This document shows positions 90 through 49,813 of a DNA stretch of 64,000 bases, in pieces; positions within the stretch are counted from its first letter, which is position 1, and every line of letters starts with the position of its first letter. The position numbers and the translations under genes were made by a program. The stretch spans positions 15,314,001-15,378,000 of the forward strand of contig OZ249452.1 in the NCBI GenBank assembly GCA_965235115.1. Reading direction: 5' to 3'. The notes under the pieces are model-generated. The model was given only the letters and a program-made list of their open reading frames with translations. It was not told the origin of the DNA and ran no database searches. The stretch is from Laetmonice hystrix. Taxonomy: Eukaryota.

Positions 90-164
90 CTGTTTTTTTG
101 TACTCTTCCTGCGGATGGCCCGGCGGAGGTTCGACGATCGCTCCCGCATGTTGACTCCACTCAT
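90..164 (-). CDS. Candidate alternative first coding exon (MSGVNMRERSSNLRRAIRRKSTKKQ), phase 0
   Basis: ATG with A at -3; 25 codons ending at CAG|GTGAGC; (CAG)n-type leader and two X-box motifs upstream. Confidence 0.65.
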
Positions 165-5483: not shown

Positions 5484-6153
5484 CCACCTGGTCAAGTAAC
5501 CAGTCATTGCCTCACTGGGTCTAGAAGCCATCCCAGTCCCACCTGGTCAAGTAACCAGTCACTGCCCCACTGGGTCTAGAAGCCATCCCTCTCCCACCTG
5601 GTCAAGTAACCAGTCACTGCCCCACTGGGTCTAGAAGCCATCCCTCTCCCACCTGGTCAAGTAACCAGTCACTGCCCCACTGGGTCTAGAAGCCATCCCT
5701 CTCCCACCTGGTCAAGTAACCAGTCACTGCCCCACTGGGTCTAGAAGCCATCCCTCTCTCACCTGGTCAAGTAACCGGTCATTGCCTCACTGGGTCTAGA
5801 AGCCATCCCAGTCCCACCTGGTCAAGTAACCGGTCACTGCCCCACTGGGTCTAGAAGCCATCCCTCTCCCACCTGGTCAAGTAACCAGTCACTGCCCCAC
5901 TGGGTCTAGAAGCCATCCCTCTCTCACCTGGTCAAGTAACCGGTCATTGCCTCACTGGGTCTAGAAGCCATCCCTCTCCCACCTGGTCAAGTAACCGGTC
6001 ATTGCCTCACTGGGTCTAGAAGCCATCCCTCTCCCACCTGGTCAAGTAACCGGTCACTGCCCCACTGGGTTTAGAAGCCATCCCTCTCCCACCTGGTCAA
6101 GTAACCAGTCACTGCCCCACTGGGTCTAGAAGCCATCCCTCTCCCACCTGGTC
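5484..6153. repeat. 55-bp minisatellite, about 12 copies
   Basis: ccacctggtcaagtaaccagtcactgccccactgggtctagaagccatccctctc repeated at a 55-bp period. Confidence 0.97.
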
Positions 6154-7173
6154 GAGTAGTCATTTTGTCCACTGCATAGTGTGTCCAATTCACACTCTCT
6201 CTGACACCTACCCTACTTATGCATATTACTATATATAACATTCTCCCGACTGTATCATATATCCATACCTTTAAGTTCCGATTATCCAGTACCCTCCCTT
6301 ACAACATGCGAGTGGGGGAAAGGAAAGGAAAGGAAGCGTTCAATTATCATGATGTTCGATACCGTTGCCGACATTAGCGCCCTCCTGTGACAGACTTAGA
6401 AAGGTTCTAGTTCTCTTAATGACCGCTAGAGGCCATGCGACGGTTGAACATGACGTGTTGCGTGCATGCTATTACACTAATTGAACAACACCCATGCTGT
6501 GCGACTCTTTCCTTACATAACATCGGTGTGGCTATGTCATATAACACTGCATTCGAAGTAAAACACCCAAGGCCCTGATCTTATACGCTAACAGGATGAT
6601 ATGACGTCATGCCAGATGATGGGGGGGGGGAGGGGGGAGATGAGCATTGTCTACCCCTTACACCTCTTTGTATATTACATTTGTTCGAGTTATACGTGTT
6701 ACGCATTTTCAAAATGCTAGAAAATCTTGAATCCTATCATGACATAGACATACTCCCACTGCAAATTTAACCAGGGCATTCCAAGATTCTCACACACGAA
6801 AAAGTGTTGCCCTTAAAAATATCAATTTGGCATGAAAGTGAATCCAACACATCTGGATTATTCACAAAGTTATTGAAGCAGGACAATTAAGTTTCGAAAC
6901 GATATGACATCGTCTACATATAAAACTCCAAAACACACATGTACATATCTGAAATATCAAACAAGAAAAAATGGAAAATTCCCATATGCTCTGCAAAAGA
7001 TAATGAAAATTTGAAATGTTTTCGACAAAATATATGGAAAAACATCCGAAAGAAAAATGGTACCAAGCCCGACATACTATCTAGAAAAAACGGAAATAGA
7101 ACCAAAACAACCTGAAAATGATGCACTTCGATTGGTCAATGGTGATCACATGATATAAAGTCACGTGACTTAC

Positions 7174-7287
7174 CTCCTCAGCCAGATCCTCCGGCTCAGC
7201 CAATGGCGGCTCTTCTTTACTTCTCTCTTGTAGGCGGCTCTGAAAGATGCGACAAATCATTAGCACAAGGCGAACGGTTTCTTTCAT
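7174..7287 (-). CDS. Candidate alternative first coding exon (MKETVRLVLMICRIFQSRLQERSKEEPPLAEPEDLAEE), phase 0
   Basis: 38 codons ending at the consensus donor GAG|GTAAGT; in-frame stop upstream; the Kozak context is weak. Confidence 0.62.
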
Positions 7288-10200: not shown

Positions 10201-11521
10201 TACTCTTTCCACTCCAGTGGCTGGAAATGAAGCAAATACATATTTCTTCTTGGAACATGTGCTGTTCATTCCCCCTCCATTTGCTCTACCATGCAAGTCT
10301 AAATTTATTTTTGTCATAGTCTGAAACCGGGGTGAAAAAGTGCCAGTTTAGAGCTTGACCTCAGCAGCCTCGATGCCAGTTCTCAATCCTCACTGGCTCA
10401 TTACTATTGGTCAGCTGACCTACACGGGAGCCAATCATAACGCACCATACGGATTGCTCCATAGTATCTCTCACTCGGCTCACCGTCGACTAGAATGGGA
10501 GACTCATACCTTGCGACACTCCAGAAAATTATATTCTGTACCAAATGGCGGCTTGCACTAACCCTTTATCTGAACTGTATACATTTGTATTGTCATATTT
10601 AATGTAAATCTTACAGCAAAATATTTATTTCAACTTCAAATAACTTCATTTTGGAGTAACCAAAGGATATCTTTAGCAATGCATTCGTTTCTAAAATGAA
10701 TTAATTTTTACACAAATAATATTGGATAATTTATCGCTAACATCTACTTATATGCAATTTTAATTAGGTGTTAAATAATTATTGAGAAATTAACAACACC
10801 AATACGTGTACTACGTATCTAATAGCGCACTGCATGACTTCTCGACTTGGAAAATGGTAAATTTATCTACAGACATCTCAGCGATAGAGATAAAGAGACA
10901 TTTTCCCATCACCAACAGTATAAAAGTAGGCCTATTAGTCGGTTACCATGCCAACGAATTTTATAGGTGTAAGACACTCGGTGCAGACAATCACACTCAA
11001 GTAAAGAAAATCATTCTGTGACCAACAACCTCCACTAAAATCTACCTCACAGGATACCCACAGGGACAGTTATCAAAACGACGGACAGACACCAAACACA
11101 AGTTGTACTTGAACTGTGATCTACTTAGGTTGAAAGGGGCAGCAGTGGCTTTACGGTCTCAGATATATGGAAGAGCATTTAAGACTTGTCTTCGAAAATT
11201 GGTTTGAGAATTTTAAAATTTTGTGGCGGCAAAAAGTGTACAATAACGACAACTTCGTACAAAAAATCTGCCCCCTGCGTTCTAGGAATTTGGCCAACGA
11301 TAAGCCGGCAACAACAACAACAAAACTAGACCACAGACAAAACATCACCAAAACATACTACAAACTGTGAGGGACAGGGCGTATCGAAACAGTGCTGGTA
11401 TCTAGAAGTTTTAGTGTATGGGGAACCCGCTAGGGTCACACATTACCCTGTGGTTTTCGGGAGTGGCTGTGGGAGAGGTTGGCCATGACAACACAAGCGA
11501 CCCTGTAGAAGCCAATCTCAC

Positions 11522-11659
11522 CATGCAATCCGACATCTCAACCTCTCTGGCTGGGGACGGTAGAGGCGACGATTTCTCGTCCACAGCCTCTTCGTTCGTT
11601 TTGCTACTAAGGCAAGAGAAGAACTTGAAGATCTTGCTTTTTTTCTTAGTTTTACCCAT
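11522..11659 (-). CDS. Candidate alternative first coding exon (MGKTKKKSKIFKFFSCLSSKTNEEAVDEKSSPLPSPAREVEMSDCM), phase 0
   Basis: Perfect Kozak CCACCATGG; 46 codons ending at ATG|GTGAGA; phase matches the donor at 22681; CACGTG x2 and TGACGTCA about 340 bp upstream (11998-12021). Confidence 0.7.
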
Positions 11660-14600
11660 GGTGGTATTGTCCGAGGTTTACCACCACCTTATGGTAATCC
11701 TGTTAATGCATCCACATGACAAGACGCTGAGACGTCGCCAGGCCCACATGGCCGAATCGAGGTGAACAAAGCACCACAGAAATTAGCAGCAGTTTCAAAC
11801 AGGTTTATGTGAAGTGCTATCATAACCTGGCGCCAACACTTGCGATTATTTTTTCAACCTGAAGAACACAGACTGACTGATGGCAGGAAAACCGAATATT
11901 GGCGTTTTGAGCAAATAAAATGTCGTTTTCTTCACTTCTGCATCACTGGAAGGTGTTTTAACGAGACTTTGAAAACATACACACAGCCACCGGATATCAC
12001 GTGATCGTCACGTGACGTCATGGAAGACAGACATGGCAATGACCACCTCCAGCCAAGATGACCTTGAGAGCTATTCTACCCGGAACTTAAGTTTCCTCCT
12101 CTACCGGTAGGTGGCGGTGCGGGCTGTTAACAATGGAAGGAATGGTGTTTGTCTGAGGAGGAAGTTTCACCTGCCGCTTTCTATTATAGCTAGGTAACAA
12201 CGCAATCCGAAAAGGGTCCGCTTTACAGGTACAAACACCAAACAGGTGATCGTGAATTCTTGGACGATCCTGAATATGGATGAGGACAATGTTTCGCAAG
12301 TACACTACATTCCTGGTGTGGCAATAAACACATCCTTGTATTCACACACGTGACCTAAGTACTACGCATCAAAGCAGTGTTTCACAGGGAATCCCACTGG
12401 AAGGTAGAAGCGTCTTGATATCTATTCCTAGCAGCAGTGGCAATAATATCCTGATCTGGTATAATCATGTCGAAATAATCCCATGTGATGTCGACGAAGA
12501 TTTTGTTTCTATTGGGTGAGGGGGGTTGAGGTCGGAGGCCTGGCGGCCTGAGGTCAGTGCTGTGCTGTACTATGCGCAGTGTTGTCGTCGCAGTGCCGTC
12601 ACTACCAGTGCCTGGCTAAGCAAGGCCCTATGTCACCAAGGCGGGTGCGGGTGCCAGCAGCCCTCCAAGAACCCATGTATACGACACCGAGACCTCGCCA
12701 GCATAAGCACGACGGCCAAGGTCAAAGGTCAAAGACCCGACCTTCCGGTCAGACTGAATGCCGAAATCAGCCCTGGTACTTCCGCTTACATCAGTTCAAG
12801 GCCCCTTGACCAGTGGTCAATTCGGTCTAATTACCGCCTGCTAATCCGTGTTAATACAATGACCATATAACAAGTCGGTTCCAACTGACTGATGTCACAT
12901 TGTAATCCAGCTGTGGTTAAGACCATTGAAGGGCATTCGATACGTTGCCCTCAGACGTTACTTGTACTATTACCACCTGTTGGCTTATTGACCTTCACCA
13001 AACCGTTACACAACTCAAGCACCCACAGGTGTTCCAATGTGTCCTCACTGAACTATCCACCTTCAGTGTTTAACCTTGATAATCCAATCATACTGGATGA
13101 CGTTCCACTTATCCTGGTTCAGCTGTCTGTGGATGAAGATGAACCTGTTCTTCAGGCACTGTTATCACTCAGGGCCTCACTCGTTGCAGTCAATTCAATA
13201 GTTTATCTGCACGCCTGGCATAAACTCTCCAGTGTGCAACAGTTTGAATCGTCTGACGACTAGCGACTGAGGGTCCAGGAGGCCTGATCCTCGGTAAGTC
13301 GTGGATTAGGGAGAGATTATCCTATCTCTGGTGTAAATCTCACACCAATGGTCCCGGGAAGTGTTCGATCTCAGCTCCAGAACCGTAAACACACACAGGA
13401 ACACTCTATGTGATTTCAAACAGACCGTGGTGACCAGGCGATCTCAATCCGATTCATGACAAAAGGACGTAGTTCTCTCAGACATCCTCACGACTGGCTC
13501 ACAACTGCGAACGCCACGTTTGAGACGGACCGATGACGGGACTGTGACGTCACGCGCGTGGCGCCGTCTGGTTAGCGGACCGTGGATAACGGCTCAGTGT
13601 AATTGTCCCTGGTCGTCCTGCCCTATATCTCTCCACTCTGTGAGCCACATGCAACCTTTGCTTTCAACAACTCTCTCTCTCCTTCAACTATACCACTCTC
13701 AACCTGCACACACGTAGATCTGCCTACACCTGCATGCACTCCTTACCAATTCCACTCACGGCGACCTACAATCTACAACTCATTCTTTTGAGACCTTTTC
13801 TTCACTTAAATCTTTAAATTTTTCACGGCTGGTGGCCACTGAAAGCAAACCATTTTTTACTATTTTATAATGGGTCCAGAAGCGTCCTATATCCATATAG
13901 ACAGCAACAGACTTTACGAGCCATTTCGTTTAAATTTCAACTAACAAATCTGCATTGTGTTCTAGTCGAGAATATTAATTGACATTAATTTTGACACAAC
14001 CAGACTCGTATCCCAGTCAGGGAACATCAGAATGGGGTCTCACTAATGATCATACTCCAATCGTCACTCAAGGCATAATTAGGTCAATCTGCTGGTCCTA
14101 GCTGCAACTTGGATCATGACCCAATTTCCATGAAAACATCCGCAGCCGTTTTAAACCTTGTTCATGCAGGCTGTCTGTTTCCAAGAAGTCTTTTCACAAA
14201 GCTCCCACACAATGGGCATGTCTGTATATCTACACCGTGTGAAACATGGGCGGTTTACGCAGAGGTTTTTCTCGTTAGGAACCCTGGAGTTGTATACATA
14301 ACTCTTGTCTGGCCTTACAATCCTTCAGCCTGCCACGCGCCACCGTTTCTAACATCAACTTGTGTTTGTTTATGCTAGATAACTGTACGTTCCCTGCACA
14401 CAACAGGCGTTCCTCCTTGCTTCAAATACGGATTTCATTTTTTAATTTATCTGACCTCGCTCTTCATCTCAACCACTCCGGCGTCCCCTGTCAGCCAGCC
14501 CCAGGTGTCAAATCTTCGTGACCTTGAGGTCTGCAGCGACCTCTAATGATGATCTATGTCAAACATGGCCTCCCATGGCAATTAACTCTAATCTCGACCA

Positions 14601-16356
14601 GGAATAGCACGCGGATGTCCAAAATTAGACAGCAAGGCGACATCGGAATCGCCAGGTTGTTATGGCAACAGCAACAATCCTTCCCCCGTCCTAATTTTAC
14701 TTTCTGTTTGCGGTTTAACCAAGCAGCATTACCAAGAGGTGAACAAAAGCTTCTTTGACTCTGAAATTAGCAACAGGAGTTCATCTGGGCTGTCTCAGTG
14801 AAACGTTGCCTCCTCAATGTAACTGGTTATTGTAAATGGCGCCGCTGCAGGCAAGGCATGCATTGGATCCTAACACATGTAGTCAGGCCATTTATCCACA
14901 GCAATCTGCCGTCACTGGCGATTTATTGAACGCTCCGTCATATTACGTCTCTCCGCCGCCACTAAGCTGTCTCGACGGCTCTCATTGGACGGGCACAATT
15001 CCGAAAACATACACCTACTCTGCTCATTGGCCGAAAGCCACCAAACGGCCAAAATACACACTAATAAGTACGTCGAGTTGCGTCAAAACTCTACTCTTGT
15101 TTGATAATGAAACGGTCCCGGCTCAACTACCGTACCGGAATGGTCCCTCTGTTGGACGGACCCGAACCGCCAGAGACAGCGGGCATCGTGAACATTACCT
15201 TCTGACCCTTTCTTCACAGACTGATCACAACTCTACTGAAAGCTACACTTTGGCGTCAATGCACGACTTCTAGACTCGCGTTCTATTTCAGGACCTCGGT
15301 GCCCTGCAATTAGCATTGCTAATCTTTCCCAAGTGCCATAGCAACGTTTTCCCCTCTTCATTTACTCTTTAACGCCCCAGTTTTCAATAATCAATTTCAT
15401 TAAAACTACTTTTCCAGGCATGCTGGCTTCTATGTATCACTCGAAAAAATCGGTTTCCATGGAAATCAAACTACGTCCATTGACAGGTGAGAAAGTGGCA
15501 CAGCGGATGCTAGGCCGACCACGTTGGGACGATAAAATCCCCGTCGGTTCTCGACATGGGACAACAATTGTCTCTCACACTGATCCAACAGTGGTCGTCA
15601 GGCACCCGGCCGGGCGGTTGCCATGGTAACCAGTCTACTTTTGTAGTAACCACAATACCCTCAACAGGAGGGCCGCCTACGGCATACATCAAAATTGACT
15701 CGTAATAGCTATAATATCCGGCTGTCTTTCGCCTAATGAAAATGTAACAAACTGATATATGTTTCTGTCTTAATGAGAGGTTTACAATGGCATCCTAAAG
15801 GTAAGTGAGTAAGGCATTACTTCAGTAGGCCAATCGACCACCCGTCTCTGTTACCTCATTGACTACTCTCCCTAGCAACCATGGCGAGACCTACAATCAC
15901 ACCTACGTAACCGCCCAAGGTTATAACTCTTAGTAACCAATGACTACGGAAACCACTGAACGATCTACTTAGATCACAGATATCACCGAGGTATCTCTAC
16001 ATCATATGTACAACCAGTGCAATTCAATGAGAAACTATTCTACAACGGTCTAAGAAGGCAGGAGGCTCAGAGAAATGCACATAGTCCCTTGAATATGTTT
16101 CTGGGGGTTATTATGGCTCACAGATTATTGTACCAACTCAAACACGTTGTGCGTTCAGGTCAGCTGGCAGGTTTGGTCGGATAGTCATGACGTCACTTAT
16201 CCTGGGTCAGATTAGCAGATGATCCAAGGGAATAATAACCCGTTGGTCGTAGGAAAAAGATCACACATTGCATGGAGGGGATGACTTGGAGGGTACAGTG
16301 CAGTATTCTTGATGGAAAAAACACACTGCAGTCCTGCCCACATCCACTTGAGCACT

Positions 16357-16666
16357 TCTGACGTCCGCTGTAGAACTGCCGACGCCCACTGTAGAACTGC
16401 CGACGCCCACTGTAGAACTGCCGACGTCCACTGTAAACCTGCCGACGTCCACTGTAGACCTGCCGACGCCCACTGTAAACCTGCCGACGTCCACTGTAGA
16501 CCTGCCGACACCCACTGTAAACCTGCCGACGTCCACTGTAGATCTGCCGACGTCCACTGTAGACCTGCCGACGCCCACTGTAAACCTGCCGACGTCCACT
16601 GTAGAACTGCCGACGCCCACTGTAGAACTGCCGACGTCCACTGTAGAACTGCCGACGTCCACTGCA
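16357..16666. repeat. 21-bp minisatellite, about 14 copies
   Basis: cactgtagaactgccgacgtc unit; it generates the periodic ORFs in the track. Confidence 0.96.
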
Positions 16667-18820
16667 AGCCCTGACGACGTCCAAGCCAGAAGCACAACCG
16701 TCCACGAGTGCCAACCTTGGGGCCGTCGAGGGTTAAATCATCGGGATCCCTTGACTTTAGGTAAAGCAGCACTGTCTGCACAACGTTTCCACCAAGGAGT
16801 GTGTATCTGTGTGTGGTTCAGTATTCGCCAGGATACACACAGCCACACACAGCCTGGCCGATTTCTGCCCAGTTGCCGACCGATTTCACAAACCACCTGT
16901 TCACGGTCTGGGGCAAGGTCAGAGCCAAATCAAATAAACACTTTCCTCCTAACTCCACATATCATCCACATCCACCTTTTGTTACACCCTCAAACATGTG
17001 GAGTATGGGTGGGCCCCCGGTCGGATGGGGGGGGGGGGTTCAATCGGTTTCCATAGCAACCACCTTGGCTGAAAAATAGACTTGGGCGTTGAGCCAGATT
17101 GCAGAGTTGTGGGTGCAGGAACAGCTGCTCCTGGTCGTTTTCTTCCCCACCGTGAAGTCAGACCATAAGTCACAGCCAGCGGCTAAACATAGGTGGATCC
17201 TGTTGTGTGCCGGTGGGCAACCCGAAAAAACATCGCTTCTTTTAAAAGAAAGAAAGAACACACATGAGGTGGTTCAAACATGTAGGATGTAATCCTGGAT
17301 TTTGGGTGATGACAGTTCCACAGTTCCCTGGCGATAGTCACAGACCATTTCTTGCCACTGTCTCGTTTTGACGAGCTATGATATGAAGATTCCTGGACAC
17401 AAGACAGTTAAAGGTCGTGGATGATTCTGCTAAACGTACTCCCGAGTCCACCTCAATGGTGACCGCTCGACCCGGGGGGCGACCCACCTTGTGTCCTAAC
17501 TGACCACTCCCGACAGGTGAGTGGGTATGTAAACACAGGTATGTCCCGTTATAGTACACCTGATGATGATGAGGTGACCCCACCTCCATCACCTTCCCCC
17601 ATCATGGCCTCAAACACTGATGTCCCAGGCGATAATCCCGCCAGTATCTAGGTCAGATGTCCTCTGTAGTGTCCCCCACTGGTTGTCCCGTTTAGTAGAG
17701 CCAGGCCGATGTAAACACCATCACTGGTAATCAAGGATCACCGCCGATACATGTCATCAGTATTTAGTGGTTTAAATTATCTTAAACACCGGCTGCTTGT
17801 TCACCATGGAGGACACCCAGGTGCTTGTCTGCTGTCCCGGCTGTAGTAAGGTACACAAATAGTGATGATGTCACAGCTGCCCATACACACACACTAAGCG
17901 GCGGGCGGTGGGGGGGGGGGGGGTGAGAATAATGGATTAGAAAGATCCTAGATGTAGGATGCTATCCCAGCTCAGACTCATTGCGAACACTTCCTGGATA
18001 ATTCTCTCAGCGCCTCGCTGCCAACATCTTGGCACACACTGACTGGAGGAAAATGTCTCCCTGTCCTGGAGTCGTCTTCCTCCTGGCTGATGGCGGCTGC
18101 TGCTGCTGCTGTGGTTCTGTACGTCACGTCACACGTATTGGAGGGCGGGAGGCTGCACAATCTCTCCTCTCTATCTCTCTTCTCTCATAACACCAATCTA
18201 CCCTCCAGGTACGGGAAATCCGGACGATAATCTGAACCTTTAATCCACGGTGGGGGGCAGGAGGCGGAGCTGGGGTAGTCGGCCTCAGCAGGTGTCCGCC
18301 GGTGGTGGAGTAGGGGGGCGCAGCCGGAGGGGCCTCCCTGGGGTGCTGACGATCAGAAATGGGGGGCGCCTTGACCCCCTTACTGCAGAAAAAATCCAGC
18401 CGTGCAGGGCTGGCGCAATATGAGCGAGTGTGTGGTGGTGGTGGACGGCGTAGGGAGGCCTCACGTCCGCTGCCGGGGCTCTACTGGCGGTGGTGGCGGT
18501 GATGGCGCTAGTGGTGCTGGCGGCGGTGGTGCTCAGTCTGTGCGGTTAGTGCTAGTCTCTCGTCCCGCCGCTGCTGCTGCAGCTGCTGCTGCTGGATGAT
18601 GCTGGACGGAGGCGGGCGATGCTGGGACGTACGGACGGATGGTTGGGTGGTTAGCTCAGCACGCGCTGCCTCTCTCTGCCTCCCCATCCATGCTTACATC
18701 CACACACACATGGCTCGATCTCTCTCCCCGGCTTGTCACTACAGATGGCCGGCGGTAGACTGTAGTATAGACCGGCCTCGATCGGTCGGTCGGTCGGTGG
18801 CTGGGGTTAGATCGGACCTA

Positions 18821-22680: not shown

Positions 22681-22804
22681 CTTGAAGAACTTTCCAGAGT
22701 TCCGTTGGTCCTTGAGTTTGGACCCGTCCGACAAAGATTTCTCTATTGCCTGTTTGTCCAGCCGGCTTTGGCTCAGTTTCCGTACTGGATTCATGAGCCA
22801 TTTT
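22681..22804 (-). CDS. trio: Trio exon: linker (KWLMNPVRKLSQSRLDKQAIEKSLSDGSKLKDQRNSGKFFK), phase 2/0
   Basis: tttctttag acceptor and GTAAGT donor; RKWL..PVR.LS motif is conserved in Trio/Kalirin between SH3 and GEF2. Confidence 0.93.
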
Positions 22805-26973: not shown

Positions 26974-27801
26974 ACTCACACCAGTCCTGTAGTCCCAGGG
27001 AACTCACACAAGTCCTGTAGTCCCAGGGGACTCACACCAGTCCTGTAGTCCCAGGGAACTCACACAAGTCCTGTAGTCCCAGGGGACTCACACCAGTCCT
27101 GTAGTCCCAGGGAACTCACACAAGTCCTGTAGTCCCAGGGGACTCACACCAGTCCTGTAGTCCCAGGGAACTCACACCCGTCCTGTAGTCCCAGGGGACT
27201 CACACAAGTCCTGTAGTCCCAGGGAACTCACACCAGTCCTGTAGTCCCAGGGAACTCACACCAGTCCTGTAGTCCCAGGGAACTCACACCAGTCCTGTAG
27301 TCCCAGGGAACTCACACCAGTCCTGTAGTCCCAGGGGACTCACACAAGTCCTGTAGTCCCAGGGAACTCACACCAGTCCTGTAGTCCCAGGGGACTCACA
27401 CCAGTCCTGTAGTCCCAGGGGACTCACACAAGTCCTGTAGTCCCAGGGAACTCACACCAGTCCTGTAGTCCCAGGGAACTCACACCAGTCCTGTAGTCCC
27501 AGGGAACTCACACCAGTCCTGTAGTCCCAGGGGACTCACACAAGTCCTGTAGTCCCAGGGGACTCACACCAGTCCTGTAGTCCCAGGGGACTCACACAAG
27601 TCCTGTAGTCCCAGGGGACTCACACCAGTCCTGTAGTCCCAGGGAACTCACACCAGTCCTGTAGTCCCAGGGAACTCACACCAGTCCTGTAGTCCCAGGG
27701 AACTCACACAAGTCCTGTAGTCCCAGGGAACTCACGCAAGTCCTGTAGTCCCAGGGAACTCACACCAGTCCTGTAGTCCCAGGGAACTCACACCAGTCCT
27801 G
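26974..27801. repeat. 28-bp minisatellite, about 29 copies
   Basis: ccagtcctgtagtcccaggg(a/g)actcaca. Confidence 0.97.
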
Positions 27802-27812
27802 CATTTGTATTT

Positions 27813-28410
27813 GAATTCGCACCTGTAGGTACCAGGGGCAATGAACTCGCACCTGTAAGTACCAGGGGCACTGAAGTCCCACCTGTCGGTACCAGTAGCA
27901 CTGAACTCCCACCTGTTGGTACCAGGGGCAATGAACTCGCACCTGTAGGTACCAGGGGCAATGAACTCACACCTGTAGGTACCAGTAGGACTGAACTCCC
28001 ACCTGTATGTACCAGGGGCACTGAACTCCCACCTGTTGGTACCAGTAGCACTGAACTCCCACCTGTATGTACCAGGGGCACTGAACTCACACCTGTAGGT
28101 ACCAGGGGCACTGAACTCCCACCTGTTGGTACCAGTAGCACTGAACTCCCACCTGTATGTACCAGGGGCACTGAACTCCCACCTGTTGGTACCAGTAGCA
28201 CTGAACTCCCACCTGTATGTACCAGGGGCACTGAACTCACACCTGTAGGTACCAGGGGCACTGAACTCGCACCTGTATGTACCAGGGGCAATGAACTCCC
28301 ACCTGTAGGTACCAGAGCACTGAACTCGCACCTGTATGTACCAGGGGCACTGAACTCCCACCTGTATGTACCAGGGGCAATGAACTCCCACAGGGGTACT
28401 GAACTCACAC
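27813..28410. repeat. 30-bp minisatellite, about 20 copies
   Basis: gaactcccacctgtatgtaccaggggcact; explains the 206-219 aa periodic ORFs. Confidence 0.96.
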
Positions 28411-30137
28411 CCGTTGTCTACAGGACCAAGTACCTGGCATCCGGTACTGATCCAGAGACCTAACTGTCTGGTGCACCTTGCCCACAGAACTCCAGGTTGT
28501 CCAGGTGTTCCAACTGCTATTTCCTATATCATCACCTCTGTGTGTGTGTGCCTCTCATTCCCAACCCATACCGTCTGCGGTCGCAGGCTGGCCAAACTTG
28601 AAAGGGGACACCCGTGGTTGTGACACGGAAGTTCCAAGGATGTGTCTGCTTCCCCTCGCCACCAGGGGGCGGGAGGGGCGCTGTCACGGAGGCCTTGTCC
28701 CAGTTATAACTATGTGACCTCAATATGTCAGGGCTGTGTGGACAAAGCCCCTCCGGGGCCGGCTGACATCCATGGATCCCTTCTAGTTAACGTTATGTGT
28801 TTAGATCACAATGGTCGCTGTGGCAACCGCTGGCTCGGTATTCCGTGTTTACCCAGTTCTTTCCTTTTTCTCCTCTAGCACCTTCCTGCACGCTTTGTTC
28901 CCATAATGCTGTGTTTCGGCCTACTTGTATAATAATGTTTGCACGTACTCAACTTTACTATACTTACTTCGACTGCACGGACCATTATCTCAAGAACTGA
29001 CCTAGACTCCTTTTTGTTATTTTTCACTCGTCTTAAAACTCGCTTTACATTTTACAGGTGGAAGGTATGTTAACTGGTGGTGTATCATTCCGGCTACACC
29101 GGTACATGGTGTAACCACAAATATTTCCCCTCGGGTTATAAGTATTCCAGCCGATCATTCCGGTACATATTTCAATTTTATACCGAACTTACGTACTCTC
29201 AAACGAGGAAGTGTCCAAAATTAGGAGCACCAAGTTGTTTCTGTTTGTTAAATTAAAAAATAAAAAAAATAATTGACAGAAATCTCTTCCCTTCCTTGTA
29301 CTTGATAGATTTTGTCCGGGTGGTATATTGCTGAACAAGTTGATATTTCCCCATCCAGGCCCAGTATTTAATCACGTATGTTATTTTCATTTTTGCCCAG
29401 ACGTAAATCTCGACAATGACCTATACAGACCAGCTTATCTAAAACACACAGAAATATTCACATACCAACGATACCCAAGTCAAACAAACATGAGAAAAAT
29501 TCCAAATCCACCAAAACAACGCTTCAACATCGACTTCAGTTATCTATGTACGTCATCATGTTTTTACTATCAGTATCAGTCAGCACTATCCGGGAAGTTT
29601 GTATTTGTGATAAATGAGGTTATATTTTCCTTGGTCGGTGTATCATCTTGTTGTAGATTACCACAATTACCCCCCCCCCCCCCCACCCCCACCCCCACGC
29701 CAGTCTCCTGGCTGCTAGGATGGGCAGACTGATGTATGACTTCAGACATATGGTTGACTTCCAACCACCATATCATGGTAAATATCACGACCTGGGAGCA
29801 CGGTCGTGTCGGTAGATATGACTCACAATGGTGTGTATGTCCTCACATCAGAGGATGAGTCGGTCCGACCTGCCGCATGTTTCGTCGGTAACACAGTAGT
29901 TCCCAACTTGTGGAAACCTCGCCCCCGTCCCACATCCAGCAAATAAATACTACGTAAAAAATAGGATAACAAGGGCACATATCCTATACACTGAGCAGAC
30001 TAAACCAGACTTCTGGGTCGGCTTTCAACTATACACAACACAAATAATATCTATGAGTGAGCTGAGACGAGTGTTGACTAATCTATCGGGACCCGATATG
30101 ATGAAACAACGACCTACACCTACTGACTTCTATCAGC

Positions 30138-43400: not shown

Positions 43401-43909
43401 AGACTGTACCTGTCTCTACCCTATTGACCCTACGTACTCAGACCACAAACTGTCCCTGCCTTCTGACTTTCCCTGCCCTCTGACTGTCACTACTGACTGT
43501 CCCTGTCTGCTGACTGTCGGTCTTCCTGTAGATTTAGAAACGGTGTTCACTGTCAATGTAGACCATGTCTGTTTATCTGCAGAACGTGTACTGTCTGTCT
43601 GTCACACCTCTGCCGTCCGGTTACAGTATCTTTGCCTGCTGAATTGCTGGGGCTGCCGGAAACCTGGCCAGCAACAGAGGCAGATACTATTTAGCTTGCA
43701 ATTTCCAATTTACTAGACTTATCAATAACTATACTAATAAAGGCTTCTCATTAGCCACCAATCAGGGAGCCTTCCTGTCCCAATCCACCTTCAATATAAA
43801 GGCTACCGGCAGTTGATCTAATTAGTGTAATTAACATGCCGGCTCCATCGCTATAATGAGGAAACGGAGCTCGGAGCGCCGGCTTGTTGAGTTCTGCATC
43901 TAGGCCCGT

Positions 43910-44145
43910 CAACTGGGCCTTTTACCGGGGCCATGGGCCCTCCTACCGGGGCGTTGGTTGGGCCCTCCTACCGGGGCCATGGGCCCTCCTACCGGGCCGT
44001 CGGTTGGGCCCTCCTACCGGGGCCATGGGCCCTCCTACAGGGCCGTCGGTTGGGCCCTTCTACCGGGGCCATGGGCCCTCCTACCAGGGCCATGGGCCAT
44101 CCTACCGGGCCGTCGGTTGGGCCCTGCCATCGGGCCGCTGGTTGG
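43910..44145. repeat. Composite 21/25-bp GC-rich minisatellite
   Basis: gggccctcctaccggggccat alternating with gggccctcctaccgggccgtcggtt. Confidence 0.92.
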
Positions 44146-46230
44146 CCCCTTCAATCGTTTGATTTCCCTTCGTTAAAATTCCCCATTTACTGGAAATGAA
44201 AGAACTTGGGGTAGTGGGCTACAGGTATTTTGTCTCTCCTTTCATGGCATAGAAAGAACCCTAGTAACCACTGCCGTGGTGGTTACCAGAAACCTCGGCT
44301 TGTAACAAACAGTTGCCATGGAGATCCGAACTTTTTTGTTTGTTTCTAACTCAATGGTGAGAATACCGATCCACACTCAACAGATGTTATTCAATTCACG
44401 AGCTGCCGCCTCAAAACTCGCCGAGTATTCTCGTAATCAGTGTGCGGCATATGTGCCAAATTGGCATCCTGCAAAACTGGCAACGGGCTCTGGAACCGAG
44501 GCCAAGTTCTGGCAGCGTTTAACCACTGGCAGCAGACAGAAGGAAACCGTTAGTTACAATCCATATTTGGATATGAACCGTACAACAAATGCTGTCCGTC
44601 ATATTTAAGCCGTCCCTCACTAACACAGTCTGCCATATTTTACGCTCTCTATAATCGATCGTTTCATCAATATCTCAGCTGCCTCTGGTCCATACCATTG
44701 TCCATATCTCACCGACTACAGCATAACATAGTCATCTACACTTGAACGGTCTACGACAAATTCTTTTATCAATATCAAAACAACCCACAACTTACAAACA
44801 CACACATTTACATTGCGTGCAATTACTACAGACATCTATATTTGGTTTACTTCCACTTATTACGTCACAGCGTTCGCGGTTTTCGAACACCCCAACACTG
44901 GGACATCGGGAGCTGTTAATCACATTAAAACTGTCCATGAATTCGTTAACACATCTGAGTTAACGAATACGTTACAAATAACGAAAAAAGACCGTAATTA
45001 TAAAGCCCATTTATGGGGACGTTACCGACATTCCTTTCCGTTTCCATCGTTCAGACTCTTTTTTACTTAGAGCGTTTCCATGTGTGTGGGTTCGTGCAAA
45101 TGGAAACGCTGCTTTCACAAAACATGAACGATAAAAACGAAAACGGATAACGGAAACGGACACATGAGGATTGGTTTTAAGAAGCGTTCAAGGAGATGCC
45201 TGTTTTACATGCTCCTACTCTCAATGTGCTAAAAATGATTCGGATAAACGTTTTGGTTGAACGCAAAAGAGTTGCATAAATAGCAGAATCCTCATGTCAC
45301 GACAGTCCCAGAAATCTAACTGTACCAAATTTCTAAAAATGTCATTGACACCCACACTCCTAACAGACAGTGGAAACGTTAGTTTTATTCAGAAAACAAC
45401 ATCGTTTCCCATCTAGTGGTATGATTTTTGTTCATTATGCGCTGTAAAAGCCTACGTACTACAGGGACCGATCATTGACTACAATCCATGAATGTAATAA
45501 AAGAGCGGAAAGCCATCCACCATGATTGTAAACACCATCACTTGTTGAATTATTGACATGAAAATGTTCGGATGCGCATGAAATAGATTCCGGGAACGCC
45601 TCGCCACAACCGATGAATGCCATGTAACGGCAAGGAGGCCATGCCCTTGCCACATCGGAGGGCACTCCCAGTGCCACCTGCCGGTAACAATCCCAAACCT
45701 CCTCCGTGATGGCAGTTGACATTATTACCCACTGATGAAGCCACTTTTCTGGAGGAGGTTAGCGACCCCTCGCGGTGTCAAACGCAACTAAAATGTCTCC
45801 AATCGTTTCCTGCCCTATCTGACCCGCCAGCCTGGCTCCATGGCAACGTGGCAGACGATCGACGGCAGAAAATAAACGTCACCGGTTCGACAACACCATG
45901 TATAAAATATTAATTTCTGCTAGTATGATTCAAGTGTCCGCGTGGCCAAAATCGTTAGGATTCATATGCAATAACTAGGGGATAAAATGCATGGTTTGAC
46001 GTCATAACGTTCCGAGCCTCCGTTTGGAAATATCCTAGTCAACAACTATCCCCTTCACTCAACGGTCTATGCCACCAAACAACATTAATACAATGTTATC
46101 GAAGACGGGGGAGATACAAGCCGGCATGACATTGAGAGATTTAAAATAGTACGTGTATCAGCAATGCAATATTACACGGTTTGCTTTCCCCAATCGTTAT
46201 AACACATCACGTGACCACAACTCCACCTGG

Positions 46231-47389: not shown

Positions 47390-47935
47390 GACACAGTAAC
47401 TCCTCCAGTAGGCACAGCCTGTTTACAGTGTTCCAGCCCCCTCCCCCAGTAGGCACAGCCTGTTGACACTGCTCCAGTAGGACCAGCCTCTAGACACAGT
47501 CCCTCCTCCAGTAGGCACAGCCTGTTTACAGTGTTCCAGCTCCCTCCCCCAGTAGGCACAGCCTGTTGTCACTGCTCCAGTAGGACCAGCCTCTAGACAC
47601 AGTCCCTCCTCCAGTAGGCACAGCCTGTTTACAGTGTTCCAGCTCCCTCCCCCAGTAGGCACAGCCTGTTGACACTGCTCCAGTAGGACCAGCCTCTAGA
47701 CACAGTCCCTCCTCCAGTAGGCACAGCCTGTTTACAGTGTTCCAGCCCCCTCCCCCAGTAGGCACAGCCTGTTGACACTGCTCCAGTAGGCCCAGCCTCT
47801 AGAAACAGTCCCTCCTCCAGTAGGCACAGCCTGTTGACACTGCCCCAGTAGGCCCAGCCTCTAGACACAGTCCTTCCTCCAGTAGGCACAGACTGTTCAC
47901 AGTGTTCCAGCAGGTCCTGGCTGGGACAGCCTGTA
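47390..47935. repeat. 103-bp higher-order repeat, about 5 copies, built from three ccagtagg.cagcct subunits
   Basis: Near-identical ORFs in the track recur at 47423, 47526 and 47629 (103-bp offset); degenerate flanks extend back to about 47240. Confidence 0.93.
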
Positions 47936-49813
47936 GACTGCAGTCCGCCCACAGACCTGTGTACGCAGGCCGGCCTGTGTCAGGCTAGTTAGTATGTATG
48001 TATGGCGGCCGTCCGCGGTTCATGCCATGGAGTGCTCAGCCTGGCGCCAACCACTGGTAGCAGGCCGTAGGTACTGGAGGCCTCCTGCCTCCGGGAACCG
48101 CTGCCGACACCGTCCAGTATTCTGTCTCAAGTGACTCCCTCCTCTAGAGTGGCGGTTGTCTTCAGGAGAACTGCTGTTCCAGCAGGAGAGGCAATGGCTG
48201 TGACGAGGCTGGACGGGGAGAGAGGTGGGTGGGGGTTACTCCGGAAAAACGAGGTCAATGACAGATTGGGTGAGTTTGCTGTTTGCTGACGTGACGTGCT
48301 GGCAGCACGGCGGCGGTGGTGCTAGCGGTTCTGGTGGTGGTGGTGGTGGTGGTGGCCATCGCCAGGCGGCGCTGTCCTTAGCACCGCCGCAGAAGCAGCA
48401 GCAGCAGGGCGGTGACGCTGGCTGGGTTGGTATCCCGGCTGGCACGAGCCGTCACCATGGCAGCAGTGCCAGCCTGTCGCTGTGCTGCTGCTGGGTGGTT
48501 CGAAGCCGCCCCACCGACCGCGGGACCCTCCCTCCCTGCCTCCCTGCCGCCCTCCCTCCCTGCCGCCCTCCCCCCAGGTTCCACATGACACGTCGCCGTC
48601 ACACAATCCCACAGCCCGAGACGTTGCTCGTAATCTTCCTGGTCTTTCATCCCTGTTGCCATAGACACCCGAACCAAATCAACCGTTATGCTAGCCGTGA
48701 AAAGTCAAGGTAAAAACACGCCGATGAGAAAACAACGATCTTGATCAACTAATTTATCCGTGGCCACCAGACAATGCCATCAATACTCCAGTCTCGATAA
48801 TTATAAAGACCTTAACCTGTTTATCGGGACGACCTGGTTCTGCTGCAAAGTAGGCTTACCGATTCATCGGATGTGAAATGACCTTTTCTTTTGTTAACCA
48901 ATCTCTATTCATGACGACTCACGAGACAATAGACTCTTCAAAATCGAACTCATTCACAGGTCATCTCAAGGCACTTTCAGGAGTATTACAAGAACTCCTT
49001 TTTGAAATCTTCAGCTTTCTAGAAATATAAACCATCCAGAATGAAAACGAGCTTTATTTCACCGCTTCAAGTACTCTTCAAACTGCAGACAGACATTCAT
49101 GACAACAAGCGCATTGTCTTCAGCCAAATTGCGTTGCCATTGGCAACCGACCAGTGCCGTTTTTCAGACACCAGAGACTGCTACCTCACTGTGACGTTAA
49201 CCATCCCCCTCCCTCATGTGAAAAACACACCTGAAAAAAGAAACCTGAGCACCTCGACAGGAACCATTTCAATGTTTTCGTGGTAACCGTCTGCATATGC
49301 TGTGTCAGCAGCGAAGTGATCTTAGGTCAAGTCAACAAAAATAATCCCGGCATTAAGAGAACCGTCTTAAAAACTTTACCACGCCAAAATATGCGATAAC
49401 CTAAAGCAGCTTCCATAGCCGTAGTGTTGGTACTTAACGGCAGGGGGCTCTGTGAGTCGTTTAACTCATACATTGGTATTCCATACCACATGCCGAGTCG
49501 GAGAACCGGAAGTTCACAGCAAACACCTACTATGCAGTATATATATTAAAGGGATCTATAAAATACATGTATATCCAAACATTAACATAAAACAACCGTC
49601 GCAATCCTACGGGAATTGCCGGTTGCTAGAACGCCGCAAAGTGGCGCTACCTGTGTTGCCGCCTTTTCCTCCCGTCGTAAACAGAACTATTAACACTCAC
49701 CGCTGAACCCAGATTTGAAACCTCCTGCCTCGGACCGCTCCGGTGTTTTCTTTACTTTCTGTAATTGTTAAGAATTTCTTGGTACCTTTAATTTAGAATG
49801 GAGTCAGCCTTAC

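What the first reader, a model, noticed from the sequence alone, without database searches (positions are those of the whole stretch)
11522..11659. Candidate first exon with a lipid-anchor-like N-terminus (MGKTKKKSKIFKFFSCL...)
Seen: perfect Kozak, phase-0 ATG|GTGAGA donor, and an E-box x2 plus CRE cluster at 11998-12021. Established knowledge: Gly2, polybasic/aromatic stretches and a nearby Cys are typical plasma-membrane targeting signals. Position 6 is K rather than S/T, so myristoylation is uncertain. Inference: a constitutively membrane-bound GEF2 isoform. This is the best-supported member of the array.
Basis: partly seen in the sequence, partly recalled or inferred. Interest (0 to 1): 0.7.

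Follow-up and report, generated by a model that had tools for sequence, protein, structure and literature searches.

The report
Conserved alternative first exon of worm Trio
Inside a long intron of this marine worm's Trio gene lies a short protein-coding exon kept by selection in at least five distant relatives; it would start a shorter Trio protein (second exchange-factor domain plus kinase) with a strongly basic, phenylalanine-rich, cysteine-bearing head that probably holds it at membranes, although the spliced RNA itself was not seen.

Summary
On the minus strand an ATG at 11659 in ACCACCATGG opens 46 codons that end at ATG|GTGAGA (11522|11521), and an in-frame TAA lies 6 codons upstream.

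It is not a chance ORF. The peptide has homologues in at least five other, unnamed lineages. In the three that could be checked, they sit in the same intron between the same two Trio exons. Synonymous sites are saturated, amino-acid change is low, and the flanking DNA no longer aligns. M1, G2, K3, T4, F11, C16 and the G|GTGAGA donor in phase 0 are invariant.

Coding conservation runs 25 codons further, to a second conserved phase-0 donor (AGG|GTAATG, exon end 11447).

Both donors fit the phase-0 acceptor of the next Trio exon (7239-7174). The product would be GEF2-SH3-Ig-FN3-kinase, like Kalirin's Duet.

RNA evidence is weak. Transcriptome contigs cover the ATG and about 1 kb upstream, but none shows the junction, and the main mRNA skips the exon.

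Myristoylation fails the usual consensus at K3 and K6. Binding through the polybasic/aromatic stretch plus palmitoylation of C16 is inferred, by analogy with p63RhoGEF.

This is a new variant of a known kind, of moderate interest. The scan had noted this same stretch before.

The parts
11522..11659 (-). Core of the alternative first coding exon: ATG plus 46 codons ending at donor d1. It encodes a basic/aromatic/Cys head (net charge +7 in residues 1-21) followed by an acidic Ser/Pro-rich stretch (net -5).
   Evidence: sequence. (homologues; invariant M1 G2 K3 T4 K6 S8 K9 F11 K12 S15 C16 L17 S19 K20 T21 D27 E28 S30 S31 P32 S35 P36). (pS 0.76-1.0 against pN 0.10-0.38; Fisher p 1.5e-4 to 3e-14). 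(charge).
11516..11521 (-). Donor d1, G|GTGAGA, phase 0.
   Evidence: identical GTGAGA, preceded by G and in phase 0, in all six lineages although synonymous sites are otherwise saturated. In L009 the frame closes 6 codons after it.
11447..11521 (-). 25-codon extension of the exon (VRLASTGSLVLSWP...ENHR), used if donor d2 is chosen.
   Evidence: the block [AS]STGS[LI]x[VL][TS]W[PS] is conserved. Variable columns by codon position are 6/2/10. pS is 0.85 against pN 0.11-0.15 between L010 and L011/L015 (p about 1e-5). The frame is kept through indels in 5 of 6 lineages.
11441..11446 (-). Donor d2, AGG|GTAATG, phase 0.
   Evidence: AGG|GTAAAT in L011, L012 and L015, ATG|GTAATG in L010, all in phase 0. 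All protein-level similarity stops a few bases after it.
11678..11680 (-). In-frame TAA 6 codons before the ATG, with no AG in between.
11623..11836 (.). Low-depth transcriptome contig (run X4, depth 5) colinear with the genome. It covers the ATG, the first 37 nt of coding sequence and 177 nt upstream.
   Evidence: record 26. It carries the T>G allele at 11805 that is also seen in DNA run X2, so it comes from this locus. The strand cannot be told from contigs.
11881..12073 (.). Second low-depth transcriptome contig (depth 10), spanning the E-box/CRE cluster. A third contig starts at 12333.
   Evidence: records 27 and 28. X4 has no contig on the 4.2 kb of intron between 11446 and 7240.
11998..12020 (.). 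Two E-boxes (CACGTG) overlapping a CRE palindrome (TGACGTCA), 340-360 nt upstream of the ATG.
   Evidence: A role as promoter element was not established.
7174..7239 (-). Next Trio exon (22 codons, SRLQERSKEEPPLAEPEDLAEE), phase 0 at both ends. It is the expected acceptor for the alternative first exon.
   Evidence: record 25: a 2,845-nt contig (depth 91) touches only this exon. Its loose ends map to 22683-22712 and to about 5 kb beyond the window start. Orthologous exons in L011 and L015 also start in phase 0.
22681..22804 (-). Upstream Trio exon (..KWLMNPVRKLSQSRLDK..NSGKFFK). In the main mRNA it is joined directly to 7239, skipping the candidate exon.
   Evidence: Orthologues lie upstream of the leader exon in L011 and L012.

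Best explanation
The stretch is a conserved alternative first coding exon of the worm's Trio/UNC-73-type gene. It lies in the 15.4-kb intron that separates the SH3/linker part from the GEF2 part.

Proposed mechanism:
1. A transcript that starts near the exon is translated from the ATG at 11659.
2. It is spliced from G|GTGAGA (exon end 11522) or from the second donor AGG|GTAATG (exon end 11447) to the 66-nt exon at 7239.
3. The product is a Duet-like protein: leader, linker, GEF2 (DH-PH of the Trio-C/p63RhoGEF type), SH3, Ig, FN3, kinase.
4. The leader's first 21 residues have net charge +7, carry I10, F11, F13, F14 and L17, and hold the invariant C16. They most likely attach the protein to the acidic inner face of membranes.
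5. Palmitoylation of C16 probably stabilises this attachment, placing GEF2 where Gq and Rho act.

Shown: the exon is coding, conserved, syntenic, single-copy and frame-compatible, and there is transcription over its 5' part.
Inferred: the splice to 7239, the promoter, and every step of membrane binding.
For: Homologues and selection:
- phmmer of the 46 residues against 1.84 billion representatives gave only three hits, all N-terminal. A word search added more lineages.
- 23 positions are invariant in the alignment of 8 sequences.
- Synonymous sites are saturated while amino-acid change is low.
- Flanking DNA does not align at all.

Position in the gene:
- The exon lies between the same two Trio exons in L011. 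In L012 it lies after the upstream exon, and in L015 before the downstream one.
- The peptide and the DNA are single-copy in this genome, and the hit is reciprocal.

Splicing signals:
- Both donors are conserved in phase 0, and similarity ends at the second one.
- The acceptor exon is phase 0 here and in L011 and L015.
- An in-frame stop precedes the ATG.

RNA:
- Run X4 is spliced cDNA, as its record 25 shows.
- Its only other contigs in the 5.7 kb laid lie over the ATG and the roughly 1 kb upstream. None lies in the intron downstream.

Downstream module:
- DH2-PH2, SH3, Ig, FN3 and kinase exons follow.
- The DH2 exon matches Trio GEF2 (6d8z), Kalirin (8c7d) and p63RhoGEF (2rgn), E 2e-13 to 1.5e-11, against 0.009 for Trio GEF1.

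Precedents:
- A Duet promoter lies in the intron before the GEF2 exons of Kalrn.
- unc-73 encodes at least 8 isoforms, and a transgene expressing the UNC-73E isoform (Trio RhoGEF-E) was used to rescue a GEF2-specific mutant.
- The first 29 residues of p63RhoGEF, with palmitoylated cysteines, suffice for plasma-membrane binding and efficient Gq coupling.
- The Kalirin Ex1C front peptide binds phosphoinositides.
Against: - No read or contig shows either junction to 7239, and the abundant mRNA skips the exon.
- The RNA contigs stop at 11623 inside the exon. Their strand is unknown, so they could be promoter-associated or other RNA.
- The 177 nt upstream of the ATG that they cover hold 4 upstream ATGs, including a 44-codon uORF.
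- No spliced protein with this N-terminus was found in the protein collections, though length limits make this weak.
- The leader has no Pfam match.
- AlphaFold2 predicts it disordered: pLDDT 56 and no helix.
- The myristoylation consensus fails at K3 and K6.
- There is only one cysteine, against three functional ones in p63RhoGEF.
- The E-box/CRE cluster is not positionally conserved.
Confidence: 0.6

Rival explanations
1. The exon is real and starts a GEF2-kinase Trio isoform, but the leader is not a constitutive membrane anchor. It could be a nuclear localisation signal (KKSK fits K-K/R-x-K/R). It could be a calmodulin-binding site, or a PKC-switched basic site like the MARCKS effector domain. 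It could also be a regulatory or degradation tag.
For: - The invariant S8, S15 and S19 sit among lysines.
- The leader is predicted disordered.
- Myristoylation is unlikely by consensus.
- Indels between MGKT and SKFFK are tolerated in P0013 and P0015, so the geometry from G2 to C16 is not fixed.
Against: - The combination of net +7 charge, four or five bulky hydrophobic residues and an invariant Cys is the classical make-up of peripheral membrane anchors.
- The closest paralogous module, p63RhoGEF, needs exactly such an N-terminal anchor.
Confidence: 0.22
2. It is the first, or only, exon of a small independent gene nested in the Trio intron on the same strand, and is not spliced to Trio.
For: - No junction to Trio exons was seen.
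- All database homologues are unspliced ORFs of 100-287 residues.
- There are low-level colinear RNA contigs.
Against: - Similarity ends exactly at GT donors, and the tails after d2 and the stop positions are not conserved.
- Both donors keep phase 0, matching the phase-0 Trio acceptor in three lineages.
- tblastx found no other conserved reading frame between the exon and the next Trio exon. The one hit, at 7788-7738, is out of frame with the real exon of L011.
- The position in the same Trio intron is kept across saturated divergence.
Confidence: 0.1
3. It is a conserved non-coding element (an enhancer or promoter with E-box/CRE-like sites) whose open frame is incidental.
For: - CRE and E-box motifs lie in or near the stretch in four of six lineages. 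In L011 and L015 they sit inside the d1-d2 extension, read as M-T-S codons.
- A conserved non-coding motif, GGTGGAGYCTGTCA, lies upstream of the ATG.
Against: - Variation has three-base periodicity (6/2/10), with synonymous saturation and low amino-acid change.
- The frame is kept through many indels.
- The Met-Gly start is invariant, with synonymous Gly codons.
Confidence: 0.04
4. It is a chance ORF with a chance Kozak match and a chance GT.
For: ORFs of this length are common in the window, and the Kozak 10-mer alone is not significant.
Against: All the comparative evidence.
Confidence: 0.02

Closest known systems
Kalirin 'Duet' isoforms (KALRN/Kalrn internal promoter)
   Same: An internal start site in the intron before the GEF2-encoding exons gives proteins that lack Sec14, the spectrin repeats and GEF1, and consist of GEF2 with or without Ig/FN3-kinase (PMC11630257, PMC3541206). 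The worm exon sits at the equivalent place, and the predicted product has the same architecture.
   Different: No sequence similarity to the Duet leader was tested, because no Duet sequence was available from the tools. The papers read give no membrane-binding role for the Duet leader. The worm exon offers two conserved donors.
p63RhoGEF (ARHGEF25) against its GEFT isoform
   Same: A Trio-GEF2-type DH-PH is preceded by a short N-terminal basic, cysteine-bearing leader. In p63RhoGEF the first 29 residues suffice for plasma-membrane binding, palmitoylated cysteines are required, and the isoform without the leader is cytosolic and couples poorly to Gq (PMC3722567). The worm DH2 exon matches the p63RhoGEF chain 2rgn_B at E 1.5e-11.
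   Different: p63RhoGEF is a separate gene, not a Trio isoform. It has three functional cysteines (C23, C25, C26) against one here. It has no Gly2 and no phenylalanine cluster. Homology of the two leaders was not tested.
C. elegans UNC-73 GEF2 isoforms (UNC-73E and others)
   Same: One Trio gene gives at least 8 isoforms. [quoted passage not shown] Splice variants that resemble Kal Duet 9 act in pharynx and vulval muscle (PMC3541206).
   Different: No lipid- or membrane-binding leader is described for them in the papers read. The sequences were not compared.
Kalirin exon 1C 'front peptide'
   Same: An alternative first exon of a Trio-family gene encodes a positively charged, hydrophobic N-terminal peptide. 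It binds phosphoinositide-containing membranes and changes localisation (PMC9823006).
   Different: It lies at the 5' end of the gene, in front of the Sec14 domain, not in front of GEF2. It forms an amphipathic helix, whereas the worm leader was predicted disordered.
Polybasic/aromatic membrane-binding segments (MARCKS effector domain, K-Ras4B tail) and the ARF6 N-terminus (own knowledge)
   Same: They combine lysine clusters with phenylalanines and phosphorylatable serines. ARF6 starts MGKVLSKIF and is myristoylated despite K3.
   Different: The MARCKS domain is internal, and MARCKS has a canonical MGxxxS start. ARF6 has S6. The worm leader has K6 (S6 only in the P0013 lineage).

Membership tests
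Alternative first exon of a Trio/Kalirin gene giving a GEF2-type ('Duet-like') isoform | Lies on the gene's strand, in an intron upstream of the GEF2 exons and downstream of GEF1/SH3. | tested here: met
   Spectrin, PH and SH3 exons lie at 56-36 kb. The exon lies in the intron 22680-7240. DH2-PH2, SH3, Ig, FN3 and kinase exons lie downstream.
Alternative first exon of a Trio/Kalirin gene giving a GEF2-type ('Duet-like') isoform | Own start codon, and not readable as an internal coding exon. | tested here: met
   The ATG has A at -3 and G at +4 in all lineages. In the window an in-frame TAA lies 6 codons upstream with no AG in between.
Alternative first exon of a Trio/Kalirin gene giving a GEF2-type ('Duet-like') isoform | Donor in a phase compatible with the next constitutive exon. 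| tested here: met
   d1 and d2 are phase 0 in every lineage. The acceptor exon is phase 0 in the window, L011 and L015.
Alternative first exon of a Trio/Kalirin gene giving a GEF2-type ('Duet-like') isoform | Spliced transcript that joins it to GEF2 exons. | tested here: inconclusive
   Only assembled contigs were available. None spans 11522 or 11447. Low-depth contigs cover 11623-11836, 11881-12073 and 12333 onward. No spliced protein was found.
Alternative first exon of a Trio/Kalirin gene giving a GEF2-type ('Duet-like') isoform | Own promoter or transcription start. | tested here: inconclusive
   An E-box/CRE cluster is present but is not positionally conserved. Contigs cannot show transcript starts. 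There are several upstream ATGs.
N-myristoylated proteins (NMT substrates; PROSITE PS00008 pattern G-{EDRKHPFYW}-x(2)-[STAGCN]-{P}, recalled from own knowledge) | Gly at position 2. | tested here: met
   G2 is invariant in 8 sequences, with synonymous GGT/GGG codons.
N-myristoylated proteins (NMT substrates; PROSITE PS00008 pattern G-{EDRKHPFYW}-x(2)-[STAGCN]-{P}, recalled from own knowledge) | Residue 3 is not charged, aromatic or Pro. | tested here: not met
   K3 is invariant. ARF6 is a known exception (own knowledge).
N-myristoylated proteins (NMT substrates; PROSITE PS00008 pattern G-{EDRKHPFYW}-x(2)-[STAGCN]-{P}, recalled from own knowledge) | A small residue (S, T, A, G, C or N) at position 6. 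| tested here: not met
   Position 6 is K in the window and in all lineages except P0013 (MGKTRS..).
p63RhoGEF-type palmitoylated N-terminal anchor | Cysteine(s) next to basic and hydrophobic residues within the first 30 residues, in front of a GEF2-type DH-PH. | tested here: met
   C16 is invariant within ..FK[FL][FL]SCL... Net charge is +7. The DH2 type is shown.
p63RhoGEF-type palmitoylated N-terminal anchor | The cysteine is S-acylated and required for membrane localisation. | not testable with these tools
   Needs acyl-exchange or click-labelling assays and C16S imaging.
p63RhoGEF-type palmitoylated N-terminal anchor | Sequence homology of the leader to those of p63RhoGEF or Duet. | not tested
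   No tool-derived vertebrate leader sequence was available. phmmer at E<=0.001 returned only the three unnamed clusters.

The most novel reading that the evidence does not exclude
A membrane-anchored, GEF2-only transcription unit inside Trio may be ancient. On this reading the worm leader, the Kalirin Duet leader and the palmitoylated head of p63RhoGEF descend from one ancestral internal first exon, and p63RhoGEF arose by duplication of that internal unit.

The serine-studded polybasic head may also work as a switch. Phosphorylation by PKC, itself downstream of Gq, or binding of Ca2+/calmodulin would release the exchange factor from the membrane. The two conserved donors would give a short and a long version of that switch.
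Probability: 0.12. Interest if true: 0.7.

Novelty: new variant of a known kind. Interest (0 to 1): 0.45.

Why it matters
Trio-family GEF2 domains are the link from Gq to Rho, and they work well only at the plasma membrane. In mammals that placement is supplied by a separate gene (p63RhoGEF, with a palmitoylated head). For Kalirin's Duet and for the nematode's GEF2-type UNC-73 isoforms, the papers read here describe no means of membrane placement.

A leader exon held by strong selection in front of GEF2 in several distant worm lineages suggests that membrane pre-positioning of this module can be built into Trio itself through an internal first exon. It gives a short, testable peptide (G2, C16, the lysines, the phenylalanines).

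It also shows that annotation which ignores long introns would miss a selected isoform of a major neuronal signalling gene.

Tried and rejected
- Reads: the four runs found were three DNA runs and one set of transcriptome contigs. There were no joints at the exon, so splicing stays unproven.
- Protein search with the window's 88-codon frame: nothing found. It sees only proteins of 48-154 residues.
- Search with P0002 residues 1-56: only unspliced ORFs found. It sees only proteins of 113-359 residues. Full-length isoforms of more than 1,000 residues could not be searched for, because no stop-free long reference contains the leader.
- Pfam on the ORF: no family.
- AlphaFold2 with the 8-row alignment: pLDDT 56 and no secondary structure, so no fold search was made. 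The hydrophobic moment is about 0.5 for residues 8-19, but that is only a calculation.
- Nucleotide alignment of the flanks with L009, L010 and L011: only the first 90 nt of coding sequence align. The E-box/CRE cluster is not alignable.
- The tblastx hit at window 7788-7738 against L011 13184-13234 looked like an extra exon. It is out of frame with the real, longer Trio exon of L011, so it was rejected.
- The in-frame 'VEPVTK' upstream of the ATG in L009, L011, L015 and L012 suggested upstream coding. This was rejected: the window and L010 have stops there, and the motif is in another frame in the window.
- The PH2 exon gave no PDB hit. Searches were a one-base coordinate slip, corrected.
- tblastn of the other array member (90-164) against the relatives' loci: only noise. 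Those loci probably do not reach that far.

Full report
**What is there.** On the minus strand an ATG at 11659, embedded in ACCACCATGG, opens 46 codons (MGKTKKKSKIFKFFSCLSSKT...SDCM). They end at 11522 and are followed by GTGAGA. An in-frame TAA lies six codons before the ATG, with no AG between them, so in this frame the stretch cannot be an internal coding exon. CACGTG-ATCGT-CACGTG-ACGTCA lies at 11998-12020.

Taken alone it is weak.
- The Kozak 10-mer is expected 0.27 times in the window, and 23 of 100 shuffles have at least one.
- Frames of this length are common here.
- The CRE palindrome occurs 15 times in the window against about 1 expected.

**The gene around it.** The window is G000:C29:15314001-15378000. 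Earlier notes of the scan call this genome a marine worm; I did not verify that.

The minus strand carries a Trio/Kalirin/UNC-73-type gene.
- A spectrin exon lies at about 56.3 kb, a DH-associated PH exon at about 51.5 kb and an SH3 exon at about 36 kb.
- Beyond the window's start come a second DH-PH, an SH3, Ig, FN3 and a protein kinase.
- An exon of the second DH matches Trio GEF2 (6d8z), Kalirin (8c7d) and p63RhoGEF (2rgn_B) at E 2e-13 to 1.5e-11, against 0.009 for Trio GEF1.

**RNA.** Of four public runs that hold the stretch, three are DNA. One (X4) is a set of transcriptome contigs.

Its 2,845-nt contig (depth 91) touches the laid 5.7 kb only at 7173-7241. Its two loose ends map to 22683-22712 and to about 5 kb beyond the window start. 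The main mRNA therefore joins the exon 22804-22681 (..KWLMNPVRKLSQSRLDK..NSGKFFK) to a 66-nt exon at 7239-7174 (SRLQERSKEEPPLAEPEDLAEE) and then to EQIETSVESVG.., all in phase 0. It skips the candidate, which lies inside that 15.4-kb intron.

X4 has three more contigs, at depth 5-10, colinear with the genome: 11623-11836 (over the ATG), 11881-12073 (over the E-box/CRE cluster), and from 12333 on. It has none on the 4.2 kb of intron downstream of the exon. The first of these carries an allele also seen in a DNA run, so it comes from this locus.

This pattern fits a low-level transcript that starts upstream and loses the downstream intron. However, no contig reaches either donor, contigs show neither strand nor ends, and the covered 5' flank holds four upstream ATGs, including a 44-codon uORF. 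Splicing is therefore not shown.

**Conservation.** phmmer of the 46 residues against 1.84 billion cluster representatives returned three proteins. Each matched at its very N-terminus (E 2e-7 to 3e-5, 60-67% identity). Cluster look-up and a word search added more. All are unnamed ORFs called on contigs of animal DNA:
- NCBI assemblies GCA_013332915.1, GCA_013332975.1 and GCA_029980185.1;
- ENA assemblies filed as metagenomes;
- Logan runs.

The DNA obtained (L009, L010, L011, L012-L014, L015) represents at least five lineages besides the window. Synonymous sites are saturated between most of them; only L011 and L015 are close, with dS about 0.4.

Position and copy number:
- In L011 the order is Trio exon RKWLTNPVRKLSQSRLDK, then the leader exon, then Trio exon ..DEPPLAQQEDLASE.
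- L012 shows the upstream neighbour and L015 the downstream one.
- The peptide is single-copy in this genome, and the relatives' peptide hits only this place.
- Outside the first 90 coding bases, nothing aligns at the DNA level.

Within the N-terminal block, pS is 0.76-1.0 against pN 0.10-0.38 (Fisher p 1.5e-4 to 3e-14). In an alignment of eight sequences, M1 G2 K3 T4 K6 S8 K9 F11 K12 S15 C16 L17 S19 K20 T21 D27 E28 S30 S31 P32 S35 P36 are invariant. This is a protein-coding exon under purifying selection, conserved about as well as the neighbouring Trio linker exon (76% against 77% identity to L011).

**Where the exon ends.** G|GTGAGA follows the open frame in phase 0 in all six lineages, although the exon's length varies from 46 to about 100 codons. 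That the Val-Arg codons are identical among otherwise saturated synonymous sites argues for constraint on the bases themselves, as expected of a 5' splice site.

In L009 the frame closes six codons later, and what follows is a decayed, out-of-frame remnant.

In the other five lineages the frame stays open through indels up to a second conserved phase-0 site: AGG|GTAAAT, ATG|GTAATG, or AGG|GTAATG at 11447|11446 in the window. After it, all similarity stops.

Between the two sites, the block [AS]STGS[LI]x[VL][TS]W[PS] varies at codon positions 1/2/3 in 6/2/10 columns. Between L010 and L011/L015 it shows pS 0.85 against pN 0.11-0.15 (p about 1e-5). That segment is coding too.

Both fit the phase-0 acceptor at 7239, and the orthologous exon in L011 and L015 also starts in phase 0. 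No other conserved frame lies between the leader exon and that acceptor.

**What the product would be.** The predicted protein is leader, 22-residue exon, acidic linker, GEF2, SH3, Ig, FN3, kinase. This is the architecture of Kalirin's Duet, whose promoter also lies in the intron before the GEF2 exons (PMC3541206, PMC11630257). It also resembles the UNC-73 splice variants likened to Kal Duet 9.

**The leader.**
- Residues 1-21 carry net charge +7 with I10, F11, F13, F14, L17 and C16. Residues 22-46 carry net -5 and are rich in Ser-Pro.
- AlphaFold2 gives no structure (pLDDT 56), and Pfam gives nothing.
- Against the usual N-myristoylation pattern (own knowledge: PROSITE PS00008), G2 is met, but K3 and K6 are both disallowed. 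Only the P0013 lineage has S6. I therefore do not file the leader as myristoylated, although the invariance of Met-Gly-Lys-Thr shows that the extreme N-terminus matters.
- A lysine cluster with phenylalanines and a neighbouring cysteine is the classical make-up of peripheral membrane anchors.
- The nearest paralogous module, p63RhoGEF, depends on just such a head. Its first 29 residues suffice, palmitoylated cysteines are needed, and the GEFT isoform without them is cytosolic and couples poorly to Gq (PMC3722567).
- Within the family, Kalirin's exon 1C also encodes a basic hydrophobic front peptide that binds phosphoinositides (PMC9823006).

Membrane pre-positioning of GEF2 is thus the most likely function. 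It is an inference. 'Constitutive' is not justified, because the invariant serines among the lysines would allow a phosphorylation or calmodulin switch.

**Promoter.** The E-box/CRE cluster is real, but its meaning is open.
- In L011, L015 and L012, similar motifs lie 190-400 nt downstream of the ATG, partly as M-T-S codons of the extension.
- L009 and L010 have none; L010 has three CATGTGAC instead.
- The window as a whole is rich in CRE palindromes.
- The RNA contig runs across the cluster.
- A different short motif, GGTGGAGYCTGTCA, is conserved 27-123 nt before the ATG in the relatives and is weak in the window.

**Verdict.**

| Claim | Probability |
|---|---|
| The exon is coding and under selection | about 0.9 |
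| It is a Trio alternative first exon, given that it is coding | about 0.8 |
| Its leader is a membrane-binding head, given that it is a Trio first exon | about 0.6 |

It is a new variant of known kinds: internal-promoter GEF2 isoforms, and N-terminal anchors on GEF2-type exchange factors. The scan had already listed this same stretch (s1-311010) and the array it belongs to (s1-310965).

Noticed in passing
window, 15 sites (3578, 6602, 12013, 13545, 16188, 21258, 21340, 21879, 22055, 23090, 32496, 34209, 36999, 37843, 45997): The CRE palindrome TGACGTCA occurs 15 times against 1.08 expected (0 of 100 shuffles reach this). Four copies lie in one repeated element at 21.2-22.1 kb, and eleven are in unique contexts, several beside exons or candidate exons.
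   Followed up: partly
window 7130-7173 (minus strand); L011 13325-13420; L015 13420-13520: Just after the donor of the 66-nt Trio exon lies a cluster of CACGTGAC, CATGTGATCAC and a CCAAT box. The relatives have GTGACGTCATG and CCAATCAC-like motifs at the same place. It may be a conserved intronic regulatory element or another internal promoter.
   Followed up: no
L011 13318-13330; L015 13413-13425: In two relatives the Trio exon orthologous to 7239-7174 is about twice as long and ends in GAG|GCAAGT, an apparent GC-AG intron. The window has GAG|GTAAGT.
   Followed up: no
L009 860-880, L010 645-660, L011 10001-10015, L012 10001-10015, L015 10001-10015; window about 11690-11670: The motif GGTGGAGYCTGTCA is conserved 27-123 nt upstream of the leader ATG in five lineages and weak in the window. 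L011 and L015 also share a short upstream ORF, MELF.K.KT.
   Followed up: partly
window 5500-6200: A minisatellite of about 60-nt units (..gaccaggtgggagagggatggcttctagacccagtggggcagtgac..) lies in the intron downstream of the 66-nt exon.
   Followed up: no
window 16200-16800, 27730-28520, 43880-44200, 47430-47980: Tandem repeats give long spurious open frames in several frames and on both strands.
   Followed up: no
window 90-164 (minus strand): The other array member (MSGVNMRERSSNLRRAIRRKSTKKQ|gtgagc) found no match in the relatives' loci. Those loci probably do not extend to the orthologous region, so this says nothing either way.
   Followed up: partly
window 11692-11823 (minus strand): A 44-codon upstream ORF starts at 11823-11821 and ends at TAA 11692-11690, just before the leader ATG. 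It lies within the RNA-covered 5' flank.
   Followed up: no
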